From positions 186,001 to 250,000 of IMG/VR virus record IMGVR_UViG_3300042868_005134: DNA of 64,000 nt, one strand, 5' to 3'. Both the position numbers and the translations under genes were made by a program. Position 1 is the first letter of the stretch; each line of letters starts with the position of its first letter. The notes under the pieces were generated by a model. That model made no database searches. It saw nothing but the letters and a program-made list of their open reading frames with translations, and was not told where the DNA came from. Shown here in pieces: positions 35,418 through 62,949 of this stretch.

Positions 35418-35418
35418 T

Positions 35419-36369: not shown

Positions 36370-36377
36370 ATTACGTC

Positions 36378-36397
36378 TATTTATCTAGCCATAAATA
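36378..36397. promoter_or_regulatory. Divergent pair of late-like promoters
   Basis: TATTTAT (36378-36384) and ATAAATA (36391-36397) between divergent radical SAM genes. Confidence 0.65.
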
Positions 36398-36401
36398 TCT
36401 C

Positions 36402-37679
36402 ATGACACCAAATACTATATTTCCAATTAAGTCTGAAACTGCCTGTTTATTAAAATGGGCCTGGAGCAGTCTTTTCGTATATCAAGGAACTTCTAGCTCA
36501 TGCCATCGAACAATACATTCTTCGTTTGGTCCAGAGTTAATAGGCACTTTTCACAATACTCCTGAAAAAATCAAAGAACGTGAATTAATGCTTAACGGTA
36601 AATGGCCAGGTCGCGGGTGTGAATATTGCCGAGATATTGAAGCCGCCGGCGGCACAAGTGATCGTATGAGAGAATTGGAAGGGTTGTCGGATCCACTTTA
36701 CCGAGGATTTATCCCGCCAGAATTAAAAGATAATCCCTTTGCTACAGTTGTCACTCCTACTATGTTAGAAGTTTACTTTAGTAATTTGTGTAATATGACA
36801 TGCTTGTATTGCGGCCCAGATTTAAGTACACAATGGGTCGCTGAAAATAATATTCATGCAGGTGATCGTGGTAAACAGCAATTTAAAATACATCAAGAAC
36901 GACAAAATTTATATCCTGAGCGTTTAAAATATTTTTGGGAATGGTTATCAAACAACTATCAAAGTCTCAGGATGTTTAACGTATTAGGTGGCGAGCCATT
37001 TTACCAAGATGAAACAGAACAATGTATTGAATTTTGGAATAACAATCCCAATCCCAAAATGCATTTTAGCATATTTTCTAATTTAAAAGTTAAGCCTGAA
37101 AAATTTAAAAAAATATTAGATAAATTTGATTATCTTATTAAAAATAAAAAAGTAAGTTCTATAGGGATAACAGCTAGTCTTGATTGTTGGGGCGTCGAAC
37201 AAGAATATGTGCGATGGGGCGTAGATTTAAATGAGTGGGAAACTAATTTCAAAACTCTTGTTTACGATTACCCTAGCATAAAGATTTGCGTTAACAGTAC
37301 AATAAATTGCCTTTCTATAAAAACTATGCCCGAATTACTAACTAGAATTAATGATTGTAATTCTTATCGTAAAAGTATTACAGGTAATGATATTATTCAT
37401 AGTTTTAATATGTTAACGGAACCAAACTTCATGAATGCTAAGATTTTCCCGGCAGGGTTCTTCGATGAAGATTTTAAAAAGATTTTAACTGTTATGCCTT
37501 CAGCCACAGCAAGAGAGCAGAGTCTAAAAGAGCATATGGAAGGTATTTGGAAAGCATACAATTCTGCCAAACACGATCCTAGTCAAATTGCTTTGTTAAA
37601 AGAAGTACTCGACGAAGCAGACAAGCGTCACAAAACCAATTGGCAAACAATTTTTCCTTGGTTAACGGACATACATTAA
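36402..37679 (+). CDS. Radical SAM enzyme with N-terminal auxiliary Cys domain (type B)
   Basis: N-terminal 'ACLLKW...SSCHR...GCEYC'; core CNMTCLYC; 'GGEP'. Confidence 0.9.
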   Translation: MTPNTIFPIKSETACLLKWAWSSLFVYQGTSSSCHRTIHSSFGPELIGTFHNTPEKIKERELMLNGKWPGRGCEYCRDIEAAGGTSDRMRELEGLSDPLYRGFIPPELKDNPFATVVTPTMLEVYFSNLCNMTCLYCGPDLSTQWVAENNIHAGDRGKQQFKIHQERQNLYPERLKYFWEWLSNNYQSLRMFNVLGGEPFYQDETEQCIEFWNNNPNPKMHFSIFSNLKVKPEKFKKILDKFDYLIKNKKVSSIGITASLDCWGVEQEYVRWGVDLNEWETNFKTLVYDYPSIKICVNSTINCLSIKTMPELLTRINDCNSYRKSITGNDIIHSFNMLTEPNFMNAKIFPAGFFDEDFKKILTVMPSATAREQSLKEHMEGIWKAYNSAKHDPSQIALLKEVLDEADKRHKTNWQTIFPWLTDIH

Positions 37680-37682
37680 ATA
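37677..37682 (+). promoter_or_regulatory. T4-late-like TAAATA box
   Basis: Overlaps the upstream stop codon; 4 nt before the SDR ATG. Confidence 0.5.
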
Positions 37683-37686
37683 CTAG

Positions 37687-38232
37687 ATGAAAATACTTAT
37701 TACTGGAAATCCAAATTTTGGCTTAGCATCTGAATTGTTTAAGCTATACCCTGACGCAACATTCATATCGAGAGAAAGTGGATATGATTTAACCACCCGA
37801 GAAGGTTATCGTAAACTAGGTGAGATAGTCGCAGAATACGATATTTTTATCAATTCAAGTGCGTTATGGAAATTTAATCAAACGCTAGTACTTGATGCTG
37901 TATATAAAAAATGTGTAGAGATCAAACACAATATGCGAATCATTTGTATAGGTAGCACTACAGATAGAGTTAAGAAAGCAACATCGTGGATTTATAACGC
38001 TGAGAAAAAAGCACTACGTGATTATTCAAATAGTTTAAGTTTAACAGGTGTGTGGGATTCAGGCCCAACAGTCTCGCTAATCAGTTTTGGCAGTTTGTCT
38101 AATGTACAAGAAAAACACCCAGGCCGTGTTTGTTTAGAACTATCACGTGCCGCATCTTATATTAAATGGTTGATTGACCAGCCTTCGGATATATGTATTA
38201 ATGAAATCAGTATTGACCCTTTACAACATTAA
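37687..38232 (+). CDS. Short-chain dehydrogenase/reductase (SDR)
   Basis: 'KILITG...GL' Rossmann start, 'FINSSA', 'IGS', catalytic YxxxK ('YNAEK'). Confidence 0.75.
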   Translation: MKILITGNPNFGLASELFKLYPDATFISRESGYDLTTREGYRKLGEIVAEYDIFINSSALWKFNQTLVLDAVYKKCVEIKHNMRIICIGSTTDRVKKATSWIYNAEKKALRDYSNSLSLTGVWDSGPTVSLISFGSLSNVQEKHPGRVCLELSRAASYIKWLIDQPSDICINEISIDPLQH

Positions 38233-39545
38233 TGACTAAAACCTTTTGTCCTATTCCTTGGAATTTCCAAGCAGTCCGTAATAACGGAGATATTCGTGTA
38301 TGTTGTCAAGCCAACGTAACAGAAAATCAAGGTGTGGTTAGACATGCGGACGGTACTCCGTTCAACGCTGGTAAAGATGATATGGAAATTGCTCGAAATG
38401 CCACACTGATGAAAGAAGTTCGTATGAACATGTTGACAGGCGAGTGGAGTAAAGAATGCGGCCGGTGCCAACAAGAAGAAGCAAGTGGCTTAAACAGTCG
38501 TAGACAATACGAACTAGATAACTGGAAATTTAGTATAGATGATGCTCGCAACATTACAGACGTTGATGGCACCATTAAAAATAGACAGTTAGAATATTAT
38601 GATTTACGATTTGGTAACTTATGTAACTTAGCGTGTCGTATGTGTGGTCCAACCGATAGTCATACTTGGTATGAACAATGGACAGAATATCATGGTAGTA
38701 CAGATTACGCAGACACACACGGCATTGTAAAACTAATTAAAAACTCTAAAGGCAGATTAAGTACTGAGGATTATGATTGGCATAACAGTGAAACATTCTG
38801 GCAGCAAATAGAAGCTAATATTCCAAATATCAAACATGTCTATATGGCCGGCGGTGAACCAATGATGATTGAACGTCATTATGAGTTCTTACAAAAGTGT
38901 ATCGATATGGGTCAAAGTAACAAGATGATTATCGAGTACAATACTAACATGAGTAATTTGCCACAACGTGTATTGGATATGTGGACGCAGTTTAAGCAAG
39001 TTCGTGTTGGCGCCAGTATGGATGGTATGGGCGATGTAGTAGAATATCAGCGCTGGCCTCTAAAGTGGAGCCAGGCATATAAGAACTTACAAAAGCTAGA
39101 TGAATATGCACAAAATAATTCCAATATACTTGCTTGGTTAGCGTGTACAGTAACAGCATATAACATTTGGCACATACCTCGTTTTATGAAGTGGAAATTA
39201 CAAAGTAGTGGATTTAAAAAGATTAATAGTACAAAAAAACGTCCTATCATAACACATCATGTGGCACATGGTCCAAAACGTGTTAATGTACGGGTATTGC
39301 CAGCTGACATGAAACAAGAGATAGTTGAATACTATGCTCGTTGGATAGAAGAATTTAAAACAGAATATCCAGAAGATATTGCTAAGAACGCTGAAAATAT
39401 TTTAAACAGCATTACCAAGTATATGTTAGATGCAGATTACAGTGATAAACTTCCTGAGTTTATTAAGTTTACAAAGTATTTAGACAGTGCCAGAGATCAG
39501 CATATTGTTGATATAGCACCAGAATTTAAACGATTATTTGATTAA
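38232..39545 (+). CDS. Radical SAM enzyme with N-terminal twitch-like domain (type A)
   Basis: 'FCPIPW...G.IRVCC...ECGRC'; core CNLACRMC; 'GGEP'; 'YNTN'. Confidence 0.9.
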   Translation: MTKTFCPIPWNFQAVRNNGDIRVCCQANVTENQGVVRHADGTPFNAGKDDMEIARNATLMKEVRMNMLTGEWSKECGRCQQEEASGLNSRRQYELDNWKFSIDDARNITDVDGTIKNRQLEYYDLRFGNLCNLACRMCGPTDSHTWYEQWTEYHGSTDYADTHGIVKLIKNSKGRLSTEDYDWHNSETFWQQIEANIPNIKHVYMAGGEPMMIERHYEFLQKCIDMGQSNKMIIEYNTNMSNLPQRVLDMWTQFKQVRVGASMDGMGDVVEYQRWPLKWSQAYKNLQKLDEYAQNNSNILAWLACTVTAYNIWHIPRFMKWKLQSSGFKKINSTKKRPIITHHVAHGPKRVNVRVLPADMKQEIVEYYARWIEEFKTEYPEDIAKNAENILNSITKYMLDADYSDKLPEFIKFTKYLDSARDQHIVDIAPEFKRLFD

Positions 39546-40658
39546 GATTTCAGAAGGTCTGTCTTTAGTTCTTCGTTGTCTTATAAAATGGTTACCAGTA
39601 GCATCTACACACAAGTTACTTGGTTTGGCAGCATCTGGCGCACCTATACCTAATATAGCAACAGGGTAATTATCTTCGGTAATGCCATGCTTGCTAGATA
39701 ACCAGTTAGAAATATTGCTCGGATTATAACATCCGCAAAATCCTGTCTTGTATCCTAGTAATTGTGCGGCAAGTGCTACCGCGCCTGCACTAATACCCGT
39801 ATTCAAACTTTGATGTCTTGTTAGTTCTATATCGGTATCGTATTCGAGATCGAACAGTCTATTATAAGTTTCGTCTTTATTAGCAGTCCACATAAAAACA
39901 ACTGGTGCAAGTAACTGTGTGTTATAGTTGTGCTGATTTCTGGAAGTATATGCTGTACCAATCTTTAATACTGGCATCCTTGGCAATCCGTGATTAATAA
40001 CATCGATTATAATATTAGTAAGCTGACCAATGTCGGTAGCTTCTGCTGTAATGTTAGGAATTAAAACTTGAGGTTCAGCAAGCTGAATAGCTGGTATTTT
40101 AACATTAACTAAGATATATTCTGTAATCAATCTTTGAATAAATCTATGTGCTTCAAGTTCGGCAATTTTCCTAACTTGTAAGTTTCCGTAGATATCAAAA
40201 TACTTTGATACTATGTTACGTGTGTACTTATTAGAATCTAGTTTTAGATCTTTAATGTAAGCTTCTACAACAAATCCAATATCTCTGTAACATTTGTGCG
40301 CCTCGTATACAAATCCATCAAACGGCGCACTATTAGTATCTACTTTATGCTTGATCCAAGCAGCACCTTCTCTTTTAATAAATTCTTTATTTTCTTTTAG
40401 TAATCGAACAGCGTTAGGGGCTAAATTCGGCATATTATCCGGAATATAACCTTCACTATGACAAATTTCAAATAATTCTTCTTTTGCGTCTGCGTCAGTA
40501 AATGCGATACATTTAAAGAAGTTAACATTCTGCTTGGTAGGAGTTCCATTAGCTACTTGTAACAGTAAGTTTAAATTTTCTTCAGATACGCTGTCGCTAA
40601 TCCAGTTTCTTTGACAAGCATTAATTGATGTTAGGGCTGATAATAGTTCGGTATTCAT
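39534..40658 (-). CDS. Nitroreductase-like (FMN-binding) protein with a large internal insertion
   Basis: N-terminal 'CQRNW..DSV....L..LL..A..TPTKQN' and C-terminal 'TGISAG...LAA..LGYKTGF...LGIG' follow the nitroreductase pattern. Confidence 0.65.
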   Translation of the reverse strand: MNTELLSALTSINACQRNWISDSVSEENLNLLLQVANGTPTKQNVNFFKCIAFTDADAKEELFEICHSEGYIPDNMPNLAPNAVRLLKENKEFIKREGAAWIKHKVDTNSAPFDGFVYEAHKCYRDIGFVVEAYIKDLKLDSNKYTRNIVSKYFDIYGNLQVRKIAELEAHRFIQRLITEYILVNVKIPAIQLAEPQVLIPNITAEATDIGQLTNIIIDVINHGLPRMPVLKIGTAYTSRNQHNYNTQLLAPVVFMWTANKDETYNRLFDLEYDTDIELTRHQSLNTGISAGAVALAAQLLGYKTGFCGCYNPSNISNWLSSKHGITEDNYPVAILGIGAPDAAKPSNLCVDATGNHFIRQRRTKDRPSEILIK

Positions 40659-40659
40659 G

Positions 40660-41916
40660 TTAGATTCCTTCTTTAATATTTATCATCCACGGAAATACCT
40701 GCCGCCAATTTGTATTTCTGCGTTGGTCCATTTTATCTAAGAATATTTTTAATTCTTTGACTTTTTCATAATTTGTAGGAGTTTCGATAATTTCTTTAAA
40801 AATAGCATTTACATAATTGCTGTATTCTGCGTCATTAAACATCTGCCCATTTAATTCTTGTATTTCTCTTATTTTGTCAATATATATCTCACCTGGAATA
40901 TTATGTGGATCTAAAATTTCAGGAGAAATACATTTATTGTAATTTACACTGATTTTTTTACCCTTACATGTGTTGTTCCAATGAATGACTTTTTTAATTA
41001 ATTCTGGAGTACTATGTATCGATAATGCTGACACTGTCCAGTTCATTGTGGGAATAATTTCAGGACATTCGTATATTAAGTATTCCATATTTTCTGTGAA
41101 TGTCGCAAGATCCAATCCTGTTCTAATATATTCTGATTCTATCCCCCAGCAGTCAATACTAGCAGTTAGCTCAACAGTATTACAAGTTTTTACTAATTGT
41201 TTAATTTTTTCCATCTGTTTTTTAAAAAGAGATGGTTTAATTTGCATGTTAGAAAAGATCTCAACATCGAGATCTGGATTTGGATGTGCAATCATCCAAT
41301 CTATACAATCGAAAGTTTCTTGTTGAATTAATGGTTCGCCACCTAGTATATGAAATTCTCGTAAATCACAATAATGTTTTTCCATCCACACATAAAACTC
41401 AGCTAACCTTGTTTTATAAGTCACATCATCCATTGCGATAGAATTTAAAAAAGAGTTATTACTAGGCCCGTATTGTTCCTCTTCCAACACCCACGAACTA
41501 CTTAAAAATGGCCCACAATATAAGCATTTTAAATTACATTTATTATTGAAATAAATTTCTAACATTGTAGGATTTACTGAAGTTTGTGTTGGGTTAGTGT
41601 ACAATTCTTTAGGTACATATTTCTCGTTATACGGTCTGGACAACCAATTTTTTCTATCACTAAAATTACTATATGTTTCTTGATCCTTACAGCTTTCGCA
41701 CCCGCGTCCTGGCCACTCGTTTTTTAACATTTTTTCTCTATCTATAATTACTTCGGGCGTATTGTGAAAATTTTCAATATTATCTACTTTAACATTTTCT
41801 ACCCTGTGACAAGAACTAGACGTACTAGTCCATAAGTATAAACTACTCCATGCCCATTTTAATAAACAAGCCTGTTCAGATTGGATTGGGAACCATTTTT
41901 TAGCATTTTCAGTCAT
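40660..41916 (-). CDS. Radical SAM enzyme (type B), close paralog of 36402-37679
   Basis: 'ACLLKWAWSSL...SSSCHR...WPGRGCESC'; core CNLKCLYC; 'GGEP'. Confidence 0.9.
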   Translation of the reverse strand: MTENAKKWFPIQSEQACLLKWAWSSLYLWTSTSSSCHRVENVKVDNIENFHNTPEVIIDREKMLKNEWPGRGCESCKDQETYSNFSDRKNWLSRPYNEKYVPKELYTNPTQTSVNPTMLEIYFNNKCNLKCLYCGPFLSSSWVLEEEQYGPSNNSFLNSIAMDDVTYKTRLAEFYVWMEKHYCDLREFHILGGEPLIQQETFDCIDWMIAHPNPDLDVEIFSNMQIKPSLFKKQMEKIKQLVKTCNTVELTASIDCWGIESEYIRTGLDLATFTENMEYLIYECPEIIPTMNWTVSALSIHSTPELIKKVIHWNNTCKGKKISVNYNKCISPEILDPHNIPGEIYIDKIREIQELNGQMFNDAEYSNYVNAIFKEIIETPTNYEKVKELKIFLDKMDQRRNTNWRQVFPWMINIKEGI

Positions 41917-41920
41917 GAAA

Positions 41921-41950
41921 TATTTATCGATAAAATACAGCGGTTAAATA
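41921..41950. promoter_or_regulatory. Divergent pair of late-like promoters
   Basis: TATTTAT (41921-41927) and TAAATA (41945-41950), each 4 nt from its ATG. Confidence 0.65.
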
Positions 41951-41954
41951 TAGT

Positions 41955-43358
41955 ATGAATAAAATATCCAAAACATTTTGTATTTTACCCTGGGTACATT
42001 TAAGTACCCGACCTGATGGTAGTATGAGAGTTTGCTGTACAGCCAATGCTAGTAGCGTTGGCCAGACAAACGATAGAGAACACGGCGGCATGGTAGGTGT
42101 TCTTAAGACAGACGCCGGCAAACCTAACAACTTAAATGTTAGCGATTTCAAAAGTGCATGGAACAGTTCCTATATGCGAAATGTTCGCAAACAAATGCTT
42201 AACGGTGAACAGCCTCCTAGTTGTTTAAAATGTTATAAAGAAGAGGCAGCTGGACATAATAGTAAACGTATGTGGGAAACTAAGTATTGGAGTCAACGTG
42301 TAAGTGTTAATAAGTTAATTGAAGATACTGCAGAAGATGGTAGTGTTCCACCGCAACTTGCCTATATCGATTTACGCTTTGGAACTAAATGCCAGCTAGC
42401 GTGTGTAATGTGTAGTCCTCATGATAGTTCTGGCTGGATTAAAGATTATAAAGCCATCTTTTCTGAAGTAGAAAATGCCAGTTTAAAACAAACCATGTTA
42501 TGGACTGACAAAGGCTCTACCAACGGTAGTAGTTATAATTGGCACAAACAAAACCCTGTGTTCTGGCAACAGTTTTATGAACAAATTCCTAATATGCAGC
42601 AAATTTATTTCGCTGGCGGAGAAAGTTTAATTATTGAAGAACACTACGAAATTCTTGAAGAATGTATTCGTCAAGGTCACGCCAAGAACTTAGAGTTACG
42701 TTACAACTCAAACGGCGTTGAATGGCGCGATGATCTATTTGACTTATGGAAACATTTTAAACTAGTGAGATTCCATTACAGTGTAGACAGCATTGGAGAA
42801 ATGAATGCCTATATTCGTTACCCTAGTATATGGGAACGTACTAAGGAAGTATTTCACATTCTTGATAAGCAAACAGGCAATAATGTTGAAGTTACAGTAG
42901 CTTGTGCTGTACAAGCTCTTAATATCTATTACTTGCCTGACTTTTTAAAGTGGAAATTAGAAGAGGGGTTTACAAAAATTAATATGTGGCCGTTTGGTGC
43001 AGGCGGCGTTAATTATCACTTTGTTTATCACCCGCCGCACCTTAATGTTAAAGTACTTCCTAAAGAATTCAAAGAAGCTTGTCGTAAAAAATACGAAGAG
43101 TTTTATTCATGGTGGGAAGCAAATTGGGAAAAAGGCATTCCTAGTTGGCATAAAGGTAAAGTAACATATGAAGATTGGCGTAAAGCAGAATATGGTATTA
43201 GCCGTTTGGAAGGTATGTTAAAATTTATGGAAAGTGAAGATTGGAGTAATCGATTGCCTGAAACTAAAGAATTTTTAGATTTATGCGACAAACAACGAAA
43301 TCTTAACTTTAGTGAAATTTTTCCAGAAATGAAGGATATTTTTAATGGAACAACATAA
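41955..43358 (+). CDS. Radical SAM enzyme with N-terminal twitch-like domain (type A)
   Basis: 'FCILPW.H...DG.MRVCC...SCLKC'; core CQLACVMC; 'GGES'. Confidence 0.9.
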   Translation: MNKISKTFCILPWVHLSTRPDGSMRVCCTANASSVGQTNDREHGGMVGVLKTDAGKPNNLNVSDFKSAWNSSYMRNVRKQMLNGEQPPSCLKCYKEEAAGHNSKRMWETKYWSQRVSVNKLIEDTAEDGSVPPQLAYIDLRFGTKCQLACVMCSPHDSSGWIKDYKAIFSEVENASLKQTMLWTDKGSTNGSSYNWHKQNPVFWQQFYEQIPNMQQIYFAGGESLIIEEHYEILEECIRQGHAKNLELRYNSNGVEWRDDLFDLWKHFKLVRFHYSVDSIGEMNAYIRYPSIWERTKEVFHILDKQTGNNVEVTVACAVQALNIYYLPDFLKWKLEEGFTKINMWPFGAGGVNYHFVYHPPHLNVKVLPKEFKEACRKKYEEFYSWWEANWEKGIPSWHKGKVTYEDWRKAEYGISRLEGMLKFMESEDWSNRLPETKEFLDLCDKQRNLNFSEIFPEMKDIFNGTT

Positions 43359-44172
43359 AAATTTAGAATGGGTCCCTGGCGATCCTATCACAAAAGAAAT
43401 GCTAGAGGTTAAGTCAGAAGATTACGCATTGTGGAAAAAAACGTGGGGCGATAGCTACTGTGTTGAAAATGTATTTGACGATGATGAGTTGACCTGGTTA
43501 GAAGATTTAATGTATAGAAATCATAAAAGTCGACGTGTTAAGAAAAATGGAACGCTTCACTTTAATGTAGATAACAGACTGATACAAGATAAATTTTTTG
43601 ATAAATTAAAATCAGTTATTCCTGAATTGGAAAATACTGAATTATGGGAAGGCAATTTTTTAATAACTGCTACTCCATATAATATACATATCGACACCGG
43701 TAATCACCAAGTGATGAGTAATGCTACCTATGTTCCGGGGAAGCAATTTATTATTCCTCTTTGGTTCTGTCACGGACACAAAGAGACAGATTATCCTGAA
43801 CACGGCACCGCTATTTTTAAAAATCGATTTATCATGTACGGAACAAATTTTGCCAAAGGAGACGCAAAATATGACACAAATGTTTTTTATACAGTACGTG
43901 ACTATAAGGATTTAGTATGCTATAATAAAGATGGCTCCGTGTGGAACGTTGATTGGTCTAAGCGTAGTGTAAGCGATAACGACTATATTAGATACTTTGA
44001 TCACTTTAAAAGAGAATGGCTAGACGGTTTTGAATTAGAAGCAGTCTACCAATGGAAACGTGGAAGTATTATTGTATTTGATAGATCACAAGCGCACACT
44101 GGCATCAATTTTATGAAAAACAAGGTAACACTGAAATGTGGGTTATCTATGATGACAACAGTTAAAAGATAA
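43345..44172 (+). CDS. Putative 2OG-Fe(II) oxygenase-fold protein
   Basis: HxD ('IHIDTG') and distal His ('WKRGSIIVFDRSQAH'), matching the HxD...H facial triad in a double-stranded beta-helix pattern. Confidence 0.6.
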   Translation: MEQHKNLEWVPGDPITKEMLEVKSEDYALWKKTWGDSYCVENVFDDDELTWLEDLMYRNHKSRRVKKNGTLHFNVDNRLIQDKFFDKLKSVIPELENTELWEGNFLITATPYNIHIDTGNHQVMSNATYVPGKQFIIPLWFCHGHKETDYPEHGTAIFKNRFIMYGTNFAKGDAKYDTNVFYTVRDYKDLVCYNKDGSVWNVDWSKRSVSDNDYIRYFDHFKREWLDGFELEAVYQWKRGSIIVFDRSQAHTGINFMKNKVTLKCGLSMMTTVKR

Positions 44173-48902: not shown

Positions 48903-48906
48903 AAAT

Positions 48907-50226: not shown

Positions 50227-51398
50227 TGAGCGATGATTTATCTTGGTCAGCCTACGACTTTACAAAAATTCCATACAATGATATTCAACGTGTGGGTCAA
50301 CGCACAATGTTATATCGTGACTTGTTTACAGTAAGTTGGCTGTTAGGCCGGTTCTGTAATTATCGATGTAGCTACTGCTGGCCCTATGCTCGCAGTGATA
50401 AAAAAGATCATAGACCTACAGAGTTATGTCTGCTTACGGTAGATGAGATTAAACGTCAAGCTAGAGAGCGAGGATTTAATAGTTTTCACTTTAGTCTAAG
50501 TGGCGGCGAACCAACATTTCATCCAGGCTATATTGATATCCTAAATCATCTTAATAACGACGCAGGGAATACAAACTATACCAGTGTACACATGACAACA
50601 AATATGAGTCGCAGTTTACGTTGGTTTGAAGATGAGTATTGTCCTGCTGTAAGTAAGTTTCACAGAGCTAGTATCACTGCCAGTCTACATACCGAACATG
50701 TAGACACACCAGAGAAAATGCAAGACTTTGCTGACAAATTAATATTGTGTCAAAAACACGATGTTCAAATAACTATCAATATGGTTATGGTTCCTGAATG
50801 GTTCGAACGTGACTTTGAAAATGCATTGTTCTTTCACAATCAGGGAATTAATGTAACACTAAAACCTCAGAGTGATCCTACTGCTAGCCGTGTAGTAGAT
50901 GGGTATACTCCTGAAATGTTAAAACGATTACACAATGGAATGCCACAACGTGCCTTCACAGAGAATAAAGCAGATGAAGCTAAATTAGTCAAACGCCCAA
51001 CTCCTACATTTAGAAAAGTTCCTGATCCATTGTACAAAGAAGAAAACGCAAAAATTCCACAACATTTCCAAGTAGAATTTGTTGATAGCAATAAAAAAAT
51101 CTGGTATATGGATCAAGCTGAACGATTCAATGCGTTCAACTTTAATAAGTTTAAAGGCTGGGAATGTTCCAGTGGATATCGTAGTATTATTATACGTGAA
51201 CCAGATGGCAGCATAAAACGCAGTTATAGCTGTAGTGATGTTCCGTTAGGTAATGTAGAAACTGGCTTTAAATTGTTTGACGGTCCAACGCCGTGTATAA
51301 GTGATAGCTGTGTTAGCAGTGCTGACAGTAAGATTCCAAAAAGATCGCCTGGAACTCATTTACCATTGTGGCCAGGCGATACTACTTATCTTGCTTGA
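50226..51398 (+). CDS. Radical SAM enzyme (type D)
   Basis: CNYRCSYC; 'SGGEPT'; C-terminal 'FKGWECSSG...DG...SYSC...PC...SC'. Confidence 0.9.
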   Translation: MSDDLSWSAYDFTKIPYNDIQRVGQRTMLYRDLFTVSWLLGRFCNYRCSYCWPYARSDKKDHRPTELCLLTVDEIKRQARERGFNSFHFSLSGGEPTFHPGYIDILNHLNNDAGNTNYTSVHMTTNMSRSLRWFEDEYCPAVSKFHRASITASLHTEHVDTPEKMQDFADKLILCQKHDVQITINMVMVPEWFERDFENALFFHNQGINVTLKPQSDPTASRVVDGYTPEMLKRLHNGMPQRAFTENKADEAKLVKRPTPTFRKVPDPLYKEENAKIPQHFQVEFVDSNKKIWYMDQAERFNAFNFNKFKGWECSSGYRSIIIREPDGSIKRSYSCSDVPLGNVETGFKLFDGPTPCISDSCVSSADSKIPKRSPGTHLPLWPGDTTYLA

Positions 51399-52726
51399 TG
51401 TAGACATTCTAAATATAATTTTTTTGTGTCTAGCATAAGATATCTGTTGTAATTATACATTATAATTTCTTTCCAAGAATCATATAACTTTTGCTTTTCC
51501 TCCAATGGAAGATTAGCGATTGCCTTTACTTTGTCAATTACGTATTCTAATTCGTCAAAATAATGCCTTTCATTATTGCTCGGTAATTCGAGACCAGGAT
51601 ATTCTTTAAATCCTAGTGATTTTAAAATATTTTTAATTTTATGACCGCCCAAGGTAATGAAAGGTACTCCTGACAAGATTGCCATTGAAGTTTTTTCTGT
51701 CAACATTGACGGAGTGCAATCAAAATCTTCACCGCTAATAATGGAACAAGTTTCTAGCACTATATGAAACATTGAATTTATTTCAAATGGTATCCCTGCT
51801 ATATCTTTTCTTAAATGATCTTTAGAACCGTGATCTATAAATTTTAAGGTATTTAAATTTTCTAGCTTGGTGTGTATAAAACTTAATTGTTTTTGATACT
51901 TGTGAATAATTCCTGTATTTTTACAGTCTTCTACAAACGAATCTTTTGCAGGCAATAATCTACTGTATTGACCAAAATCAGTTATCTTTTCTTTGTCTGC
52001 CCACAATTGGAATAATGTCCTAGTTAGTCTCGGTGTCCTGCAAAACGATTGCCATACTAATGTATCTTGTGTTAGTACTCTATTTCTAATTTCTTCAAAT
52101 AATGCTTCTTTTTTAGATTTCGCATTCGAATATAAATCAGAATCAATATATGCTTTATGAAAAAACGCTCCTGGAAACATGCAGTGATCTACCTGTATGT
52201 TTCTTGACCTATTAGACATATAGTTATTAACAAGTTCGCCACCTACAACATAAAATTTAAGATTTTTAATTCCTCTAAAGAAATGATTTTTAGCAGTTAA
52301 GTAATTAACATACTCGGTTTCAAATAATTTGTAAGATCTAATATAGACATTATCCATTTCGGCAGAGCCGTCGATTATTATAGGAATTTTATTTTCAACT
52401 AAGAAATCTGTCACATCTGGATCTACAGCAAAAAAATCTGTTAAATGAAAAGTCTTAACATGTAACCAAGCTGAAATAAAATAAAATACATCGACATTTT
52501 TATCAATTGTACCGTTATTCTTTACCTCAGCAATAAATTCACCAGCTTTTCTAAAAGTAATAAAATCTGAAGAGCAATTATACAATGTCCTAGGAGTTTC
52601 TGAAATCCAGCCAAATTGGTAGCCTTCTGTAACTAACTTGGCAATCAATTTTTCGTATACTCTTTCTAGTAAAGTTACAACTTTTCCATCTACGATATCG
52701 TCAACTAAAAATATTGCTTTTTTCAT
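51386..52726 (-). CDS. Putative glycosyltransferase, GT10 (fucosyltransferase)-like C-terminus
   Basis: 'FHIVLET...LTEKT..AI..G.PFI..G' resembles the GT10 donor-binding motif (F.L.FEN...Y.TEK...A...G.VPI); coupled by an ATGA overlap to gmd. Confidence 0.45.
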   Translation of the reverse strand: MKKAIFLVDDIVDGKVVTLLERVYEKLIAKLVTEGYQFGWISETPRTLYNCSSDFITFRKAGEFIAEVKNNGTIDKNVDVFYFISAWLHVKTFHLTDFFAVDPDVTDFLVENKIPIIIDGSAEMDNVYIRSYKLFETEYVNYLTAKNHFFRGIKNLKFYVVGGELVNNYMSNRSRNIQVDHCMFPGAFFHKAYIDSDLYSNAKSKKEALFEEIRNRVLTQDTLVWQSFCRTPRLTRTLFQLWADKEKITDFGQYSRLLPAKDSFVEDCKNTGIIHKYQKQLSFIHTKLENLNTLKFIDHGSKDHLRKDIAGIPFEINSMFHIVLETCSIISGEDFDCTPSMLTEKTSMAILSGVPFITLGGHKIKNILKSLGFKEYPGLELPSNNERHYFDELEYVIDKVKAIANLPLEEKQKLYDSWKEIIMYNYNRYLMLDTKKLYLECLHQAR

Positions 52727-53721
52727 CTTGCGTTAGGATTTGTCTTATAAAAATCCATCCAGTAATCTACCATCTCATCTAACATAGATTCAAAGGTATA
52801 TGTTGGTACCCACCCAAGTGTTGTTCTAGCTTTGGATGAATCACCTTTTAAATAATGTAACTCTTCGGGTCGTTTAAATTTTTCATCGGAAAATACGTAT
52901 TTTGTTCGATCCAGTTCTAATTTTTCAAATACATAGTTAACTAAGTCATTAACTGTTTTTGTCACACCAGTCGCAATTACATAATCATCACTTTTTTCTT
53001 GTTGTAGCATTAACCACATAGATTCTACAAAATCTTTAGAATGACCCCAATCCCTTGCTGCTTCAAAATTACCTAAAATTAATTTTTTAGATTTACCTAA
53101 TTTAATTTTGACAGCCTCTAATACAACTTTGTTGGTTACAAAATTAATACCACGTCTTGGGCTTTCGTGATTAAACAAAATTCCAGAACATATAAACATG
53201 TTGTACGCATTTCTATAATTATGACATAGACTATGTGCGTATAGCTTGCTACAACCATATGGCGATACAGGTATTAATGGAGTGGTTTCTCGTTGAAACC
53301 CGTCAGAGTCACACGAGTTTCCAAACATTTCCGATGTTGCTGCATGGTAAACTTTTGAATGATTGGAAAATTTTCTAACAGCTTCAAGTACTGACAATGT
53401 TCCGCCAGCATTCACATCGAGTGTATACTTTGGTAATTCAAAGCTAATCTGTACATGACTTTGTGCGCCAATGTGATAAATTTCATCTGCCTGTACATTG
53501 CTTATTACACTTTCTACACTTAGCGGATCGGTAAGATCCATGTATTTCAACTGAATACGGTTGTCCTTGAACAAATGCTCTATGCGAGTAGTTTGAGATT
53601 CAGGCACAGAGTTACGTCTTACTGTGCCTGCCACTTTGTAATTTTTAGAGACTAATAGTTCGGCAAGGTAAGAGGCATCTTGTCCATTTGCTCCAATAAT
53701 TAATGCTGTTTTTTGAGTCAT
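52723..53721 (-). CDS. gmd: GDP-mannose 4,6-dehydratase
   Basis: 'GANGQDASYLAE', 'AQSHVQISF', 'TSEMFG', 'SPYGCSK', 'NHESPRRG.NFVT.K', 'RDWGH'. Confidence 0.95.
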   Translation of the reverse strand: MTQKTALIIGANGQDASYLAELLVSKNYKVAGTVRRNSVPESQTTRIEHLFKDNRIQLKYMDLTDPLSVESVISNVQADEIYHIGAQSHVQISFELPKYTLDVNAGGTLSVLEAVRKFSNHSKVYHAATSEMFGNSCDSDGFQRETTPLIPVSPYGCSKLYAHSLCHNYRNAYNMFICSGILFNHESPRRGINFVTNKVVLEAVKIKLGKSKKLILGNFEAARDWGHSKDFVESMWLMLQQEKSDDYVIATGVTKTVNDLVNYVFEKLELDRTKYVFSDEKFKRPEELHYLKGDSSKARTTLGWVPTYTFESMLDEMVDYWMDFYKTNPNAR

Positions 53722-53722
53722 A

Positions 53723-54877
53723 TTATTCCTGATTTATAATCGAAGCAATAACTTCGATGTCTTCCTTAACTAGTCCTTGATGATTAGGAACATAAAAACC
53801 TTGTTTATCAATAATATCGGCATTTGGTAAATCTGTCAAACGTCCGTATCGTTTGATCCAGAAAGGTTTGTTTGCCATATTGCCAGCAATTAAGGGACGA
53901 GTTTCAATATTGTTTTGTTTAAGTTTTTCTATAATTTTATTTCTATTGGGCAATACAACAGGGTATGCGAAATTTGAAACAAAGTCGTTATCTCGTTGCG
54001 CAAGTAATAATTTGTTATTGTTAATTAGTTCTTTATAAATTAAAAAGTTTTTGTTACGTATCCGACTGTACTTATCCAACTTGTCAACTGCTCCAAGTCC
54101 AATGAACGCCTGTAAATCTGTTGATCTAACATTGAGTCCCGGTACGTAAAATGTATATAATGCTTCAAAGTCAGTTACATTGGCTTGCTTTCTTAATTCT
54201 TGTTGTTTACTTGTTGGCAAATCTCTATCCCATCCATGACTACGCATCATTAGTAATCCGTGATAAAATTCTTCATTATCAGTATTAATAAACCCGCCTT
54301 CGATGGTGCTTAAATGATGACCAAAGTAAGTGGAGAACAGCGACGCAATACCAAATGATCCTAAATACTTTCCTTGATATTTAGAACCCATTGATTCGCA
54401 ATTATCTTCTACTAATAGAACTCCGTATTCTTCGCACAAGTGTACTATTCTTTGTATATCTGGTACTAATCCTAATGGAGTTACCAAAATGAATACAGAT
54501 GGTTCAAACTCTTTAAAAATAGTTTCTAAGTGGGCAAGGTCGCACGATAGGTCAACTAAATTACAGTCACATAGACGTGTTTCAAAATTTAACAGCATAG
54601 GGGAACTTACATCGGTAGACCAACTCAGTGCCGGAGCAACTAATCGATTATTCTTTAAGAAACCAAACTCTTTTAATACTGCTAACGAAAGTAAAATAGC
54701 TGACGAGCCTGAGTTGACAAATACAGAATATTTTGTTCCTATCTTCTTTGCCCATTTGCGTTCTAACTCAATTGTTAATTCGCCTTTGGTTAATCGAGGA
54801 ATCGTATCCTGCGATAGCCATTCTACAAGTTTAGCAATGTCAGATTTATCAATAGTATCACTGACCAAATTTATCAT
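53723..54877 (-). CDS. colD: GDP-4-keto-6-deoxy-D-mannose 3-dehydratase (ColD-like; DegT/DnrJ PLP family)
   Basis: 'VNSGSSA.LL', 'EDNCESMG', 'STYFGHHLSTIEGG' with His at the position of the usual PLP-binding Lys, 'RSHGWDR', 'PG.NVR'; lies between gmd and an fcl-like gene. Confidence 0.75.
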   Translation of the reverse strand: MINLVSDTIDKSDIAKLVEWLSQDTIPRLTKGELTIELERKWAKKIGTKYSVFVNSGSSAILLSLAVLKEFGFLKNNRLVAPALSWSTDVSSPMLLNFETRLCDCNLVDLSCDLAHLETIFKEFEPSVFILVTPLGLVPDIQRIVHLCEEYGVLLVEDNCESMGSKYQGKYLGSFGIASLFSTYFGHHLSTIEGGFINTDNEEFYHGLLMMRSHGWDRDLPTSKQQELRKQANVTDFEALYTFYVPGLNVRSTDLQAFIGLGAVDKLDKYSRIRNKNFLIYKELINNNKLLLAQRDNDFVSNFAYPVVLPNRNKIIEKLKQNNIETRPLIAGNMANKPFWIKRYGRLTDLPNADIIDKQGFYVPNHQGLVKEDIEVIASIINQE

Positions 54878-55754
54878 ACGTTTTCCTTATGCCATCTCGT
54901 AAGGTAGTTAAACCAAACTCTGGAAATATTTTTGTTAACTTACTTATACTAACATCTTTTCGAAGTTGTCCATTAGGCATAGTTGTATCCCAGTTTATTG
55001 ATAGATGAGTAGCATCACATACATCTAACGCAATTTCAGCAATTTCTTTTATAGTTAATGTTTCGTTTGTGGCAACATTAAAACTTTCAGTAATATTATT
55101 ATCTATTACAAATTTAATAACATTACAAAAATCATCAACATGCATAAATTGTCTTAACGGTGTACCATCTCCGAATAAAGTAATAGAGTTATCATTATTT
55201 TGTTTAGCTTGCCATATCTTTTTAATTAAGGCTGTTACAAAATGACTGTTATTGCCATGCTTGTCTCCTTCTCCAAAAAGATTACACGGAATAAGATAGC
55301 TATATTGTGTGTTGTATTGTGTATTGTACGCATCAATTTGTACTCCTAAACATCGCTTTGCATAACCGTATGAAAAATTAGTAGGAGTAGGCGGCCCTAA
55401 ATGTAGCATGTTTTCGTCGAGTGGGTATGTCTCAACTACATCCGGATAAATGCAAGTGCTTAATACTCCAATGAATTTCTTTACATTATACGCATGGGCG
55501 TATTTTACTAATAATGTATTCATCAGTATATTTTCAGTAAAGTACGGTGCTGGATTATTAATGTTATCAATGATTCCGCCAACTTTAGCGGCAAGGTGAA
55601 TAATACAATCTGGTTCTAATTCTTTATACATGTTGATTACATGTTGTTCGCAAGTTAAGTCATAATCTGCCGATGACAAATATATTGCGTCTGAAATATA
55701 TTTTTTTAAATTGGCACCGACTAATCCACTTCCGCCAGTTACAACTATTTTCAT
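54858..55754 (-). CDS. GDP-4-keto-6-deoxysugar epimerase/reductase (Fcl/ColC family)
   Basis: 'TGGSGLVG', 'HLAAKVGGI', 'STCIYP', YxxxK 'YGYAKR', 'P.NL.G', 'GDGTPLRQF.H'. True start probably the ATG at 55754, which overlaps the upstream stop. Confidence 0.9.
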   Translation of the reverse strand: MKIVVTGGSGLVGANLKKYISDAIYLSSADYDLTCEQHVINMYKELEPDCIIHLAAKVGGIIDNINNPAPYFTENILMNTLLVKYAHAYNVKKFIGVLSTCIYPDVVETYPLDENMLHLGPPTPTNFSYGYAKRCLGVQIDAYNTQYNTQYSYLIPCNLFGEGDKHGNNSHFVTALIKKIWQAKQNNDNSITLFGDGTPLRQFMHVDDFCNVIKFVIDNNITESFNVATNETLTIKEIAEIALDVCDATHLSINWDTTMPNGQLRKDVSISKLTKIFPEFGLTTLRDGIRKTYDKFGQ

Positions 55755-56515
55755 TGTTTTCTCTCTATATCTTCTTCTATACATTCTGTACCGTATTGTA
55801 TTTCCACAATACGACAAACCGCTTCGAACGGATTATGTATTTTATGCCAATTGCCCAAAGGTATTACTACCTGAGAATGTTGTGTTAATGTTAGCATAGG
55901 CAATGCGTAGCCGCTCGTCAACTGCTGTTCTAATACGCATTGTCCTTCAGCAACGTGCCAAAATTCGTGACGTTTTAAATGCCGTTGCATGCTTAATGAT
56001 TGTCCCGGTTCTATAGTAAGCTCTTTTACTTTACAACCGTTTACATCATATAGTACTTGATAGTAACCCCATGTACGTGATGTTTTAATAGATTTCCATT
56101 CTTCCAATATCCAACTACTTGAATTTTTCTTTGTGTTTCCGCCAACTCCAAATACAAACTCTAGTTTATCGTCTACTAAGTCCATTTCATGTATATTTTC
56201 TTTTGTACGGTCTCCACCGTTGGCAAAAATAATAGTAGCATCGGGGTACATAGCTCTAACACCTGTGATAGTGTTTTTACTACTACCGTCGGCATCAGGG
56301 TAACAAACCACTTTATCTACAACTTTAAGAGATTCAATGATGCGGCAACGTTCGTATTCTTCCATAAAGGCCTGACCCTTTTTACGAACTAACCAATCAT
56401 CTGTATTAATACCAACAATCAGCATGTCACCTAGTTTACTAGCTGCTTCAAAGTACTCAATATGCCCAGAATGAAGGGGGTCGAAACCCCCTGTTACAAG
56501 TACGATTCTTTTCAT
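55751..56515 (-). CDS. Nucleotidyltransferase (HxGH) fused to a mannose-6-phosphate isomerase type II-like cupin
   Basis: N-terminal 'TGGFDPLHSGH...RKKG...ANGGDR'; C-terminal 'RTWGYY...KVKEL.I.PG.SLSMQRH..R.E.W.V...EIQYG..C.EEDIER'. Confidence 0.85.
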   Translation of the reverse strand: MKRIVLVTGGFDPLHSGHIEYFEAASKLGDMLIVGINTDDWLVRKKGQAFMEEYERCRIIESLKVVDKVVCYPDADGSSKNTITGVRAMYPDATIIFANGGDRTKENIHEMDLVDDKLEFVFGVGGNTKKNSSSWILEEWKSIKTSRTWGYYQVLYDVNGCKVKELTIEPGQSLSMQRHLKRHEFWHVAEGQCVLEQQLTSGYALPMLTLTQHSQVVIPLGNWHKIHNPFEAVCRIVEIQYGTECIEEDIERKQ

Positions 56516-56519
56516 ACAC

Positions 56520-56527
56520 TATTTATA
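56520..56527 (-). promoter_or_regulatory. Exact T4 late promoter TATAAATA heading the nucleotide-sugar operon
   Basis: TATAAATA on the minus strand overlapping the thyX stop, 4 nt before the ATG at 56515. Confidence 0.65.
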
Positions 56528-62918: not shown

Positions 62919-62949
62919 ATATGCGTCCTTAATATACGCATATATTTAT
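62917..62949 (-). promoter_or_regulatory. Late-like ATAAATA box overlapped by a 10-bp hairpin masking the start site
   Basis: ATATATGCGT (62917-62926) / ACGCATATAT (62936-62945) perfect inverted repeat; ATAAATA on the minus strand at 62943-62949. Confidence 0.6.

What the first reader, a model, noticed from the sequence alone, without database searches (positions are those of the whole stretch)
36391..56527. TAAATA-N4-ATG: fixed spacing suggests leaderless late mRNAs for the enzyme cluster
Seen: five genes have TAAATA exactly 4 nt before the ATG with no room for a Shine-Dalgarno sequence: 36402(+), 37687(+), 41916(-), 41955(+) and 56515(-). The gp25-like gene at 96 has 5 nt and 36369(-) has 8 nt. 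Known: T4 late promoters are a lone TATAAATA -10 box and transcription starts a few nt downstream. Inference: these transcripts start at or next to the AUG (leaderless translation), and the radical-SAM and sugar genes are expressed late, together with virion assembly.
Basis: partly seen in the sequence, partly recalled or inferred. Interest (0 to 1): 0.65.

Follow-up and report, generated by a model that had tools for sequence, protein, structure and literature searches.

The report
Late promoters abutting start codons
In this 383-kb lake-water jumbo phage, a T4-like late promoter box (TAAATA) sits 4-5 bases before the start codon of about 28 genes, so these late messages most likely begin at the AUG with no leader, an arrangement absent from T4 but conserved in related uncultivated phages.

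Summary
All seven sites are as described. With gene starts called without regard to the motif, 451 genes give spacers of N4:10, N5:7, N6:4, N7:5 and N8:2. None fall at 0-3, and a second hump lies at 15-28 nt. The 17 sites at N4-5 compare with 1.1±1.0 expected.

TAAATA is the rarest A4T2 hexamer in the genome but the commonest in intergenic DNA. Both spacing classes share the flanks g-A-TAAATA-y. SD-like sequences occur in 2/28 short-class and 34/41 long-class genes.

A gp55-family late sigma gene lies 5 kb upstream of the window. Motif-bearing genes include large terminase, tail tube, baseplate and fibre genes.

In relatives, 58 of 70 terminase contexts keep TAAATA-N4-7-ATG, and 56 of those have an intrinsic terminator ending 1-5 nt before the box. 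Orthologues without the box carry an SD instead. T4, 121Q and CBB lack the short class.

Best reading: gp55-type late promoters producing leaderless or nearly leaderless mRNAs. No RNA data exist, so transcription starts are inferred. I rate it a new variant of a known kind.

The parts
85..90 (+). TAAATA box, N5 before the ATG at 96 (gp25-like baseplate wedge gene, 96-539). The TAA is the stop codon of the upstream gene.
   Evidence: In 64 distinct orthologue contexts, 38 keep TAAATA at 4-7 nt (24 N5, 10 N4). The 26 without it mostly carry an SD at normal distance.
36378..36383 (-). TAAATA box, N8 before the ATG at 36369(-) (radical SAM gene, 35419-36369). It lies back to back with the next box, 8 bp away, in a 32-bp intergenic region.
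   Evidence: Conserved in L022, which is 82.6% nt identical overall.
36392..36397 (+). TAAATA box, N4 before the ATG at 36402. This is the first gene of unit 36402-39545 (radical SAM-like protein of 425 aa, a 181-aa protein, and a radical SAM protein of 437 aa).
   Evidence: In L022 the box is kept while the spacer changes from TCTC to CCGT. Homologues at 41-42% identity begin at the same N-terminus.
37677..37682 (+). TAAATA box, N4 before the ATG at 37687 (181-aa protein). The TAA is the stop codon of gene 36402-37679.
   Evidence: Conserved in L022 with one spacer change.
40677..40682 (-). TAAATA box of the leadered class: N18 with an AAGG/AGGA SD before the ATG at 40658(-) (374-aa nitroreductase-like protein).
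   Evidence: Conserved in L022.
41921..41926 (-). TAAATA box, N4 before the ATG at 41916(-) (radical SAM-like protein of 418 aa). This is the first gene of unit 41916-39534. The intergenic region is 38 bp.
   Evidence: Identical in L022.
41945..41950 (+). TAAATA box, N4 before the ATG at 41955. This is the first gene of an eight-gene unit, 41955-51398, of which seven are radical SAM genes and three have an N-terminal SPASM domain.
   Evidence: The SPASM domain starts at residue 9, so the ATG at 41955 is the only usable start. Identical in L022.
56520..56525 (-). TAAATA box, N4 before the ATG at 56515(-). This is the first gene of the sugar-nucleotide unit 56515-51386: cytidylyltransferase plus cupin, epimerase, DegT aminotransferase, GDP-mannose 4,6-dehydratase and a 446-aa protein. 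The TAA is the stop codon of the thymidylate synthase gene 56523-57203.
57217..57222 (-). TAAATA box, N13 before the ATG at 57203(-) (thymidylate synthase). The spacing is intermediate and no SD-like sequence is present.
565..570 (+). TAAATA box of the leadered class, N20, before the gp6-like baseplate wedge gene (591-4031).
   Evidence: phrog_10646, E 1e-294.
18824..18833 (+). Two overlapping TAAATA boxes, N28 and N24, with an AGGAG SD, before gene 18858-19772.
26096..26101 (+). TAAATA box of the leadered class, N24, with a GGGGG SD-like sequence, before gene 26126-27832. Part of this protein matches a PA5oct-group gene annotated as baseplate wedge subunit and tail pin.
62943..62948 (-). TAAATA box of the leadered class, N24, with SD, before gene 62634-62918(-).
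35419..57203 (.). Enzyme cluster organised as six short transcription units. Each begins with a TAAATA box, and no intergenic sigma70-consensus site is present.

Best explanation
TAAATA (fuller form g-A-TAAATA-y) is the -10-only late promoter element of this phage. It is read by host RNA polymerase carrying the phage's gp55-family sigma factor.

The promoter is used in two architectures. In about 41 genes the box lies 15-28 nt before the start codon, and the 10-23 nt leader carries a Shine-Dalgarno sequence, as in T4. In about 28 genes, including all five focal genes, the box ends 4-8 nt (mostly 4-5) before the ATG. Transcription then starts at, or within a base or two of, the A of the AUG, and the mRNA is leaderless. 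It would be translated by direct recognition of the 5'-terminal AUG rather than by SD pairing.

The radical-SAM and sugar-nucleotide units at window 35419-57203 each begin with such a promoter. They are therefore predicted to be switched on with the virion genes.

Shown: the motif, the spacing statistics, the absence of SD, the presence of the sigma gene, the association with structural genes, and conservation in relatives with terminators abutting the box.

Inferred: the transcription start position, leaderless translation and late timing.
For: 1. Statistics. 17 genes have the box at N4-5 against 1.1 expected, and 28 at N4-8 against 2.7. The motif is depleted in genes and enriched in intergenic DNA.

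2. The same extended motif occurs in both spacing classes. SD-like sequences occur in 2/28 short-class genes, 34/41 long-class genes and 223/451 of all genes.

3. A gp55-family sigma is encoded: phrog_12791 7e-77 and phrog_234 3e-24.

4. Box-bearing genes are late or structural. The short class includes TerL, a tail tube-like protein, the gp25-like protein and two virion proteins. The long class includes the gp6-like protein, tail fibres and virion proteins.

5. The base at -1 of the ATG is a pyrimidine in 26/28 short-class genes against 219/423 of the rest, Fisher p 7e-6.

6. Start codons are robust. Few of the 28 genes have an alternative in-frame start with an SD, and domains begin within 3-20 residues of the N-terminus.

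7. The divergent pairs 36369/36402 and 41916/41955 have intergenic regions of 32 and 38 bp. These consist of two back-to-back boxes and nothing else.

8. Comparative evidence.
- Tail-tube orthologues at 41-95% identity keep TAAATA-N4/5-ATG with varying spacers.
- Among gp25 orthologues, 38 of 64 contexts have the box at 4-7 nt, and the rest mostly carry an SD.
- Among TerL orthologues, 58 of 70 contexts have the box at 4-7 nt. In 56 of these a hairpin plus T-run ends 1-5 nt before the box, with 43 distinct hairpin sequences. None of the 12 contexts without the box has a terminator.
- L022 (82.6% nt identity) keeps every box in 36355-41970, with changes only in spacers and flanks.

9. Geometry. 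The T4 box spans -13..-6 (PMC2988020), and gp55 pockets bind positions -12, -9 and -8 (PMC7892883). The start is therefore the 6th nt after the box, which is the A of ATG for N5.

10. A -10 box 6-8 nt from the start codon is the accepted computational signature of bacterial leaderless genes (PMC6028130).
Against: - No transcript data exist. All 24 sequencing runs holding this DNA are lake-water DNA metagenomes.
- Under strict T4 geometry, N4 (the commonest spacing here) would start at the U of AUG. It needs a start one base closer than at T4 P23.
- Spacers of 6-8 nt (11 genes) imply 1-3 nt leaders, which are poorly translated in E. coli (my own knowledge).
- 9 of 28 short-class boxes overlap the stop codon of a co-directional gene, where read-through transcripts plus reinitiation could also serve.
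- gp33 and gp45 homologues were not detected.
- The gp25-like gene has GAGGAG 11 nt before its ATG, which could be a long-spaced SD.
- Low 5' structure is shared with the long class, so it is not specific to the short class.
Confidence: 0.75

Rival explanations
1. The genes are transcribed from promoters further upstream as parts of longer mRNAs. TAAATA-N4-ATG would then be an A/U-rich, SD-independent translation initiation or reinitiation signal. For the stop-overlapping cases it would be termination-reinitiation coupling.
For: 9 of 28 short-class boxes use their TAA as the stop codon of the upstream co-directional gene, including window sites 37687 and 56515. Short co-directional gaps in this genome fall into two designs, TAA-ATA-N4/5-ATG and TAA-GGAG-N-ATG. 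This is what alternative coupling signals would look like.
Against: - The same extended motif sits 15-28 nt upstream of SD-bearing structural genes, where it cannot be a ribosome signal. It matches the T4 and CBB late promoter (PMC2988020, PMC5259590).
- 19 of 28 sites are not at a stop codon. Nine face a divergent gene.
- In 56 of 58 TerL contexts an intrinsic terminator ends 1-5 nt before the box, so upstream transcripts are stopped there.
- ATA after the stop is conserved across relatives although it is non-coding.
- Sigma70-like sites are not enriched in 34000-53900, and none is intergenic in 35419-57203.
Confidence: 0.12
2. TAAATA is a late promoter, but transcription starts at the canonical 6th-7th nt after the box. 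For N4 genes that is inside the start codon, so the annotated ATG is not used and translation begins further downstream.
For: T4 geometry places +1 at the 6th nt after the box (PMC2988020, PMC7892883). For N4 that is the T of the ATG.
Against: - Most N4 genes, including four of the five focal ones, have no downstream in-frame start with an SD within 60 codons.
- Pfam and PHROG domains begin at residues 3-9 in 41955 and 56515.
- Orthologues share the same N-terminus.
- N4 and N5 interchange among orthologues of the same gene, which fits a start selected on the A.
- Pyrimidine at -1 in 26 of 28 genes.
Confidence: 0.06
3. Chance co-occurrence of an A/T-rich hexamer with ATG in an AT-rich region.
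For: The window is AT-rich (36.4% GC). The raw count of TAAATA-N4/5-ATG (27) is close to that of the reversed pattern (21).
Against: - Positional permutation null: 17 observed against 1.1 +/- 1.0.
- No other A4T2 permutation peaks.
- Intergenic enrichment together with genic depletion.
- Conservation in relatives.
- The reversed control is contaminated because ATAAAT lies inside the motif.
Confidence: 0.01

Closest known systems
Bacteriophage T4 late promoters (TATAAATA, gp55/gp33/gp45)
   Same: A -10-only A/T box with no -35 element. A gp55-family sigma is encoded. The box precedes virion genes on either strand. The leadered class has the same 20-28 nt box-to-ATG spacing with an SD.
   Different: - The core is TAAATA preceded by g-A rather than T-A.
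- No gp33 or gp45 homologue was detected.
- In T4's 50-kb late region no box lies closer than 9 nt to an annotated start, so T4 lacks the 4-8 nt class that makes up about 40% of the sites here.
Predicted ATAAATA late motif of Rak2-like jumbo phages (CBB, GAP32; PMC5259590)
   Same: Same phage supergroup: the gp55-like protein is 38-47% identical to those of PA5oct-like, 121Q, Atu_ph07 and Erwinia phages. An ATAAATA motif precedes structural genes. A gp55-like protein is present, and gp33 and gp45 were not found.
   Different: The CBB and 121Q tail-tube genes use TAAGGAG SD sites, and RsoM2USA uses box-N26-SD. TAAATA-N4/5-ATG is not above the control in 121Q, CBB or PA5oct. The paper does not mention leaderless transcripts in the passages retrieved.
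Leaderless middle/late mRNAs of Thermus phages phiYS40 and Lalka27a
   Same: These phages produce most middle or late transcripts with the initiator codon at the 5' end. This was mapped experimentally (PMC3594737; bioRxiv 10.64898/2026.04.20.719267).
   Different: The promoter types differ (for example TAGGGT in Lalka27a), and no gp55-family sigma is described for them in the passages read. Their host phylum (Deinococcus-Thermus) itself uses leaderless mRNAs widely (PMC12340547). Here half of the genes use an SD and the early promoters are canonical sigma70.
Bacterial leaderless genes of GeneMarkS-2 'group C' genomes (Mycobacterium, Deinococcus)
   Same: A -10 box at a fixed short distance from the start codon, a dual model (promoter box or RBS) within one genome, and ATG starts (PMC6028130, PMC4007540).
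   Different: Those use the housekeeping sigma with TANNNT at 6-8 nt. Here a phage late sigma motif ends 4-5 nt from the ATG, consistent with the gp55 box ending at -6.

Membership tests
T4-type (gp55-dependent) late promoter | Phage encodes a gp55-family sigma factor | tested here: met
   The ORF at genome 179845-180669(-), 274 aa, matches phrog_12791 'sigma factor for late transcription' at E 7e-77 over its full length, and phrog_234 at 3e-24. phmmer against T4 gp55 gives 2.5e-9. It sits next to gp46- and gp47-like genes as in T4.
T4-type (gp55-dependent) late promoter | A/T-rich -10 box related to TATAAATA with no conserved -35 element | tested here: met
   The logo of 69 sites shows an invariant TAAATA core, A at the position equivalent to -12 in 44/69, G at -13 in 30/69, and nothing conserved further upstream. 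In TerL contexts the -35 region is occupied by a terminator hairpin of variable sequence.
T4-type (gp55-dependent) late promoter | Located upstream of late (virion, packaging) genes | tested here: met
   Found upstream of TerL, tail tube-like, gp25-like, gp6-like, tail fibre, head-tail adaptor and virion structural genes.
T4-type (gp55-dependent) late promoter | Co-activator gp33 and sliding clamp gp45 | tested here: inconclusive
   PF02916 gave only a sub-threshold hit, to a glycosyltransferase-like ORF. PF09116, phrog_223 and phrog_254 gave no match. A clamp loader is present (phrog_168, 2.9e-82), so a divergent clamp may exist. CBB likewise lacks detectable gp33 and gp45 (PMC5259590).
T4-type (gp55-dependent) late promoter | Transcription starts about 6 nt after the box; activity is late and depends on replication | not testable with these tools
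   No RNA run holds this DNA.
Leaderless bacterial mRNA | Primary 5' end at the A of the start codon | not testable with these tools
   Only DNA metagenomes hold the sequence. The feature is inferred from the 4-5 nt spacing and from T4 geometry (PMC2988020).
Leaderless bacterial mRNA | -10 promoter element at a fixed short distance from the start codon | tested here: met
   Spacer mode is 4-5 nt, 17 genes against 1.1 expected. The same spacing holds in orthologues.
Leaderless bacterial mRNA | No Shine-Dalgarno sequence | tested here: met
   2 of 28 short-class genes have an SD-like sequence, against 34 of 41 long-class genes.
Leaderless bacterial mRNA | AUG start codon and little 5' structure | tested here: met
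   27 of 28 starts are ATG (the start-calling rule favoured ATG). Mean MFE of the first 25 nt is -0.23 against -1.05 kcal/mol, p 9e-4, but the long class is similar at -0.40.
Stop-start translational coupling | Start codon within a few nt of the upstream gene's stop codon on one mRNA | tested here: not met
   This holds for 9 of 28 sites only. The other 19 are divergent or follow gaps or terminators.

The most novel reading that the evidence does not exclude
A large clade of uncultivated freshwater jumbo phages has rebuilt the T4-type late programme into insulated 'terminator - gp55 box - AUG' cassettes. About 40% of late transcription units, including terminase and tail tube, would then be made as leaderless mRNAs in a host that otherwise uses SD-led initiation. 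The phage's own ribosomal protein bS21, or another factor, may bias late ribosomes towards these 5'-AUG messages. That would amount to a translational as well as a transcriptional late switch.
Probability: 0.2. Interest if true: 0.8.

Novelty: new variant of a known kind. Interest (0 to 1): 0.6.

Why it matters
T4 late transcription is a textbook system, and its promoters are described as a lone box followed by a leader with an SD. Here the same kind of box is fused to the start codon in about 40% of predicted late units, including terminase and tail tube genes, and this holds across many related environmental phage contigs. If start-site mapping confirms it, three things follow.

- gp55-type holoenzymes would be shown to produce leaderless mRNAs as a routine strategy.
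- There would be a simple sequence rule (box-N4/5-ATG against box-N15-28 with SD) for annotating starts and operons in this large group of jumbo phages.
- It would become testable whether such phages retune host ribosomes late in infection, since this phage also encodes bS21.

The finding also predicts that an unusual cluster of at least 12 radical-SAM genes and a sugar-nucleotide operon are late functions. This points to virion or late-stage cell-envelope chemistry rather than early host takeover.

Tried and rejected
- RNA evidence. The look-up of sequencing runs returned 24 lake-water DNA metagenomes and no RNA run. Read laying was therefore not used, because DNA contigs cannot show a transcript start.
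- Megablast of 36000-44000 against the phage collection found nothing.
- gp45 and gp33. T4 protein queries and the profiles PF02916, PF09116, phrog_223 and phrog_254 found nothing credible. The one weak PF02916 candidate is glycosyltransferase-like.
- The reversed-pattern control for raw TAAATA-N4/5-ATG counts is uninformative in this genome, because ATAAAT is part of the motif. It is still useful to show that there is no excess in PA5oct, 121Q, CBB or T4.
- RNAalifold on a MAFFT alignment of TerL upstream regions recovered only 3 pairs, because the hairpins are out of register. The per-sequence folds are the usable measure.
- 5' structure is low in short-class ORFs but equally low in long-class ORFs, so it does not discriminate between them.
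- Sigma70-type and terminator scans of 34000-53900 are at shuffle level.
- IF3_C and S1 domains are absent from the genome.
- The phiYS40 primary paper (PMC1885378) is not held. Secondary sources were cited instead.
- The host was not identified.
Full report
**Setting.** The window is bases 186001-250000 of a single 383,411-bp virus record, 40.7% GC overall and 36.4% in the window. The DNA is held by many lake-water metagenomes and by no RNA run. Its closest cultured relatives, by the late sigma factor and structural proteins, are the PA5oct, 121Q/Rak2, Atu_ph07 and Erwinia jumbo myoviruses at 38-47% identity.

**Observation.** TAAATA-N4-ATG occurs at 36402(+), 37687(+), 41916(-), 41955(+) and 56515(-). 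The spacer is N5 at 96(+) and N8 at 36369(-).

I called 451 genes with a length-greedy ORF procedure. Starts were chosen without regard to the motif: the first ATG of each ORF. In those genes the distance from the end of TAAATA to the start codon is 4 nt in 10 genes, 5 in 7, 6 in 4, 7 in 5 and 8 in 2. It is never 0-3 and rarely 9-17. A second broad hump at 15-28 nt holds 41 genes.

A null that permutes each upstream column among genes, and so keeps the SD and A-rich positional composition, gives 1.1 +/- 1.0 sites at N4-5 (maximum 6 in 2000 trials) against 17 observed. For N4-8 it gives 2.7 against 28. None of the other 14 permutations of A4T2 shows a comparable peak. TAAATA is the rarest of these 15 hexamers in the genome (285 copies) yet the commonest in the 5.6% of the genome that is intergenic (97 copies). 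That is the pattern of a signal avoided inside genes.

**What the motif is.** The short (N4-8) and long (N15-28) classes share the same flanks: G then A before the core and a pyrimidine after it, g-A-TAAATA-y. The T4 late promoter TATAAATA spans -13 to -6 (PMC2988020: 'A(-13) in place of T'). gp55 pockets take the bases at -12, -9 and -8 (PMC7892883).

A gp55-family protein is encoded 5.3 kb upstream of the window, at genome 179845-180669(-). It matches phrog_12791 'sigma factor for late transcription' at E 7e-77 over its full length, phrog_234 at 3e-24, and T4 gp55 at 2.5e-9. It lies next to gp47- and gp46-like genes as in T4.

Genes preceded by the box are typical late genes:
- Short class: large terminase (phrog_36964, 1.6e-127), a tail tube-like protein, the gp25-like baseplate protein and two virion structural proteins.
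- Long class: gp6-like baseplate wedge (E 1e-294), tail fibres, virion proteins and a head-tail adaptor.

The related phage CBB was reported to have a gp55-like protein, no gp33 or gp45, and an ATAAATA motif at 35 sites before structural genes (PMC5259590). I also found no gp33 or gp45 homologue here, although a clamp loader is present. I conclude that TAAATA is this phage's gp55-type late promoter element.

**Why the short class is best read as leaderless.**

(a) SD-like sequences occur in 2 of 28 short-class genes, 34 of 41 long-class genes and 223 of 451 genes overall. The phage therefore uses SD where there is a leader and omits it where the box abuts the ATG.

(b) With the box ending at -6 as in T4, the A of an N5 gene is +1 and the A of an N4 gene is -1. 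Polymerases choose among neighbouring positions and prefer a purine preceded by a pyrimidine. The base before the ATG is C or T in 26 of 28 short-class genes against 219 of 423 other genes (Fisher p 7e-6).

(c) The start codons are sound. For most of the 28 there is no alternative in-frame start with an SD in the next 60 codons. Domains begin at residues 3-20, and homologues share the N-termini.

(d) The divergent pairs 36369/36402 and 41916/41955 are separated by 32 and 38 bp. These regions consist of two back-to-back boxes and their 4-8 nt spacers. A leader would have to start inside the opposite gene.

(e) Comparative evidence from relatives:
- A contig 82.6% identical over 10 kb (L022) keeps every box at window 36378-41950. 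Its substitutions fall in spacers and flanks, for example TCTC to CCGT.
- Tail-tube orthologues at 41-95% identity keep [A/C]TAAATA-N4/5-ATG with at least nine different spacers.
- Of 64 distinct upstream contexts of gp25 orthologues (58-100% identity), 38 have the box at 4-7 nt (24 N5, 10 N4). The 26 without it mostly show AAGGA, GAGGA or GGAGG at normal SD distance. The two designs are thus alternatives.
- Of 70 distinct contexts of terminase orthologues (70-87% identity), 58 have the box at 4-7 nt (40 N5, 14 N4). In 56 of these a stable hairpin followed by a T-run ends 1-5 nt before the box, with 43 different hairpin sequences. None of the 12 contexts without the box has such a terminator, and several of those have an SD.

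A terminator directly in front of the box, and an ATG 4-5 nt behind it, leaves this promoter as the only source of the mRNA. It also leaves no space for a leader. In this genome the terminase gene has the same arrangement, with the stem ending 7 nt before the box.

**Contrast with known systems.** In T4's main late region (50 kb), no TAAATA lies closer than 9 nt to an annotated start. The usual distance is 21-28 nt with an SD. The tail-tube genes of 121Q and CBB use TAAGGAG, and RsoM2USA uses box-N26-SD. Counts of TAAATA-N4/5-ATG in PA5oct, 121Q, CBB and T4 do not exceed the reversed-pattern control. The short class is therefore a feature of this environmental clade, not of gp55 phages in general.

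Leaderless late or middle mRNAs are known experimentally in the Thermus phages phiYS40 and Lalka27a (PMC3594737; bioRxiv 10.64898/2026.04.20.719267). Those have other promoter types and a host phylum that is itself rich in leaderless genes (PMC12340547). A -10 box 6-8 nt from the start codon is the standard computational signature of bacterial leaderless genes (PMC6028130). My literature searches found no report of leaderless mRNAs from gp55-type promoters. That is an absence in the held library only.

**The enzyme cluster.** Window 34254-51398 holds at least 12 radical-SAM or radical-SAM-like genes, three with an N-terminal SPASM domain, plus a nitroreductase-like gene. Window 51386-56515(-) is a sugar-nucleotide operon: cytidylyltransferase plus cupin, epimerase/dehydratase, DegT aminotransferase, GDP-mannose 4,6-dehydratase and a 446-aa protein.

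From 35419 to 57203 the genes form six units:
- 36369 to 35419 (-), box at N8.
- 36402 to 39545 (+), box at N4, with an internal N4 box at 37687.
- 41916 to 39534 (-), box at N4, with an internal N18 box plus SD at 40658.
- 41955 to 51398 (+), box at N4.
- 56515 to 51386 (-), box at N4.
- The thymidylate synthase gene at 57203 (-), box at N13.

Sigma70-like sites in 34000-53900 are at shuffle level. No near-consensus sigma70 site lies in intergenic DNA between 35419 and 57203. Genome-wide, by contrast, 50 of 87 such sites fall in intergenic DNA. The cluster is therefore predicted to be late-only. One near-consensus site, with its -10 hexamer ending at window 28946(+), precedes the neighbouring unit 29013-35417, which may be expressed earlier.

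**Caveats and rivals.**
- No transcript ends are available, so the start position is inferred.
- N4, the commonest spacing here, needs initiation one base closer than at T4 P23.
- Spacers of 6-8 nt imply 1-3 nt leaders.
- Nine of 28 short-class boxes, including 37687 and 56515, use their TAA as the stop codon of the preceding gene. Read-through plus reinitiation may contribute there. This cannot explain the conserved non-coding ATA, the 19 other sites, or the terminator-box-ATG modules.
- The gp25-like gene has GAGGAG 11 nt before its ATG, which could be a long-spaced SD. It also encodes the conserved C-terminus of the upstream protein.
- Low 5' structure is not specific to the short class.

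**Verdict.** It still awaits start-site mapping. It is a new variant of a known kind: T4-type late promoters combined with leaderless expression.

| Claim | Confidence |
|---|---|
| The box is the late promoter | about 0.9 |
| The short class gives leaderless or near-leaderless mRNAs | about 0.75 |
| The cluster is late | about 0.7 |

Noticed in passing
window 34254-51398: At least 12 radical-SAM or radical-SAM-like genes lie in one cluster: 34254, 35419(-), 36402, 38232, 40660(-), 41955, 44172, 45233, 46297, 47658, 48907 and 50226. Three carry a SPASM domain at the N-terminus rather than the usual C-terminus. A nitroreductase-like gene at 39534-40658(-) sits among them. This is an unusual concentration for a phage, and the substrate is unknown.
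   Followed up: partly
window 4031-17986 (+): A single 4651-aa ORF follows the gp6-like baseplate gene. It is presumably a giant baseplate or fibre protein. It was not analysed.
   Followed up: no
genome 10739-11017 (-), outside the window (L003:10739-11017): The phage encodes a ribosomal protein bS21 homologue (PF01165, 56.6 bits, above the cut-off of 27). Phage bS21 has been proposed to favour phage transcripts late in infection (PMC9723584). Any link to the leaderless late mRNAs is speculation. No IF3_C or S1 domain is present in the genome.
   Followed up: partly
whole genome; window sites with -10 hexamers ending at 28946(+), 60150(-) and 61337(-): Near-consensus sigma70 promoters (TTGACA-N16-18-TATAAT, at least 11/12) are strongly enriched in intergenic DNA: 50 of 87 sites fall in 5.6% of the genome. 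They cluster at 80-100 kb and 340-360 kb. This suggests a host with canonical sigma70 promoters (not Bacteroidota-type) and marks probable early regions. One such site precedes unit 29013-35417, next to the late-only enzyme units.
   Followed up: partly
window 39534-39545 and 51386-51398: Convergent transcription units end in genes whose 3' ends overlap by 12-13 nt, with no terminator-like hairpin between them. Late transcripts from opposite strands would therefore overlap.
   Followed up: no
L205, L206, L212, L214, L215, L218 (TerL orthologue loci), about 13 nt before the ATG: TerL orthologues that lack TAAATA and a terminator carry ATAAGTA-N6-ATG at the same place. L142 has CAAATA-N4-ATG. 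These may be variant late boxes in sister lineages.
   Followed up: no
L131 (PA5oct, NC_071039.1 around 123795): The PA5oct tail tube gene follows a terminator-like hairpin and T-run by about 16 nt, with neither TAAATA nor an SD before the ATG (..attggatttatatATG). PA5oct has published RNA-seq and could be examined for a leaderless start.
   Followed up: no
window 57204-57222 (-): The thymidylate synthase gene (56523-57203) has a TAAATA box at the intermediate distance of 13 nt and no SD-like sequence. It fits neither spacing class.
   Followed up: no
window as a whole against the genome: The window is 36.4% GC against 40.7% for the genome. The enzyme cluster may be of foreign origin, yet it carries the phage's own late boxes.
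   Followed up: no
genome 123251-125041 (-): Two adjacent tail tube-like genes. The 212-aa gene (phrog_4542, 8e-49) has an SD. The 356-aa gene has an intrinsic terminator upstream and box-N5-ATG.
   Followed up: partly
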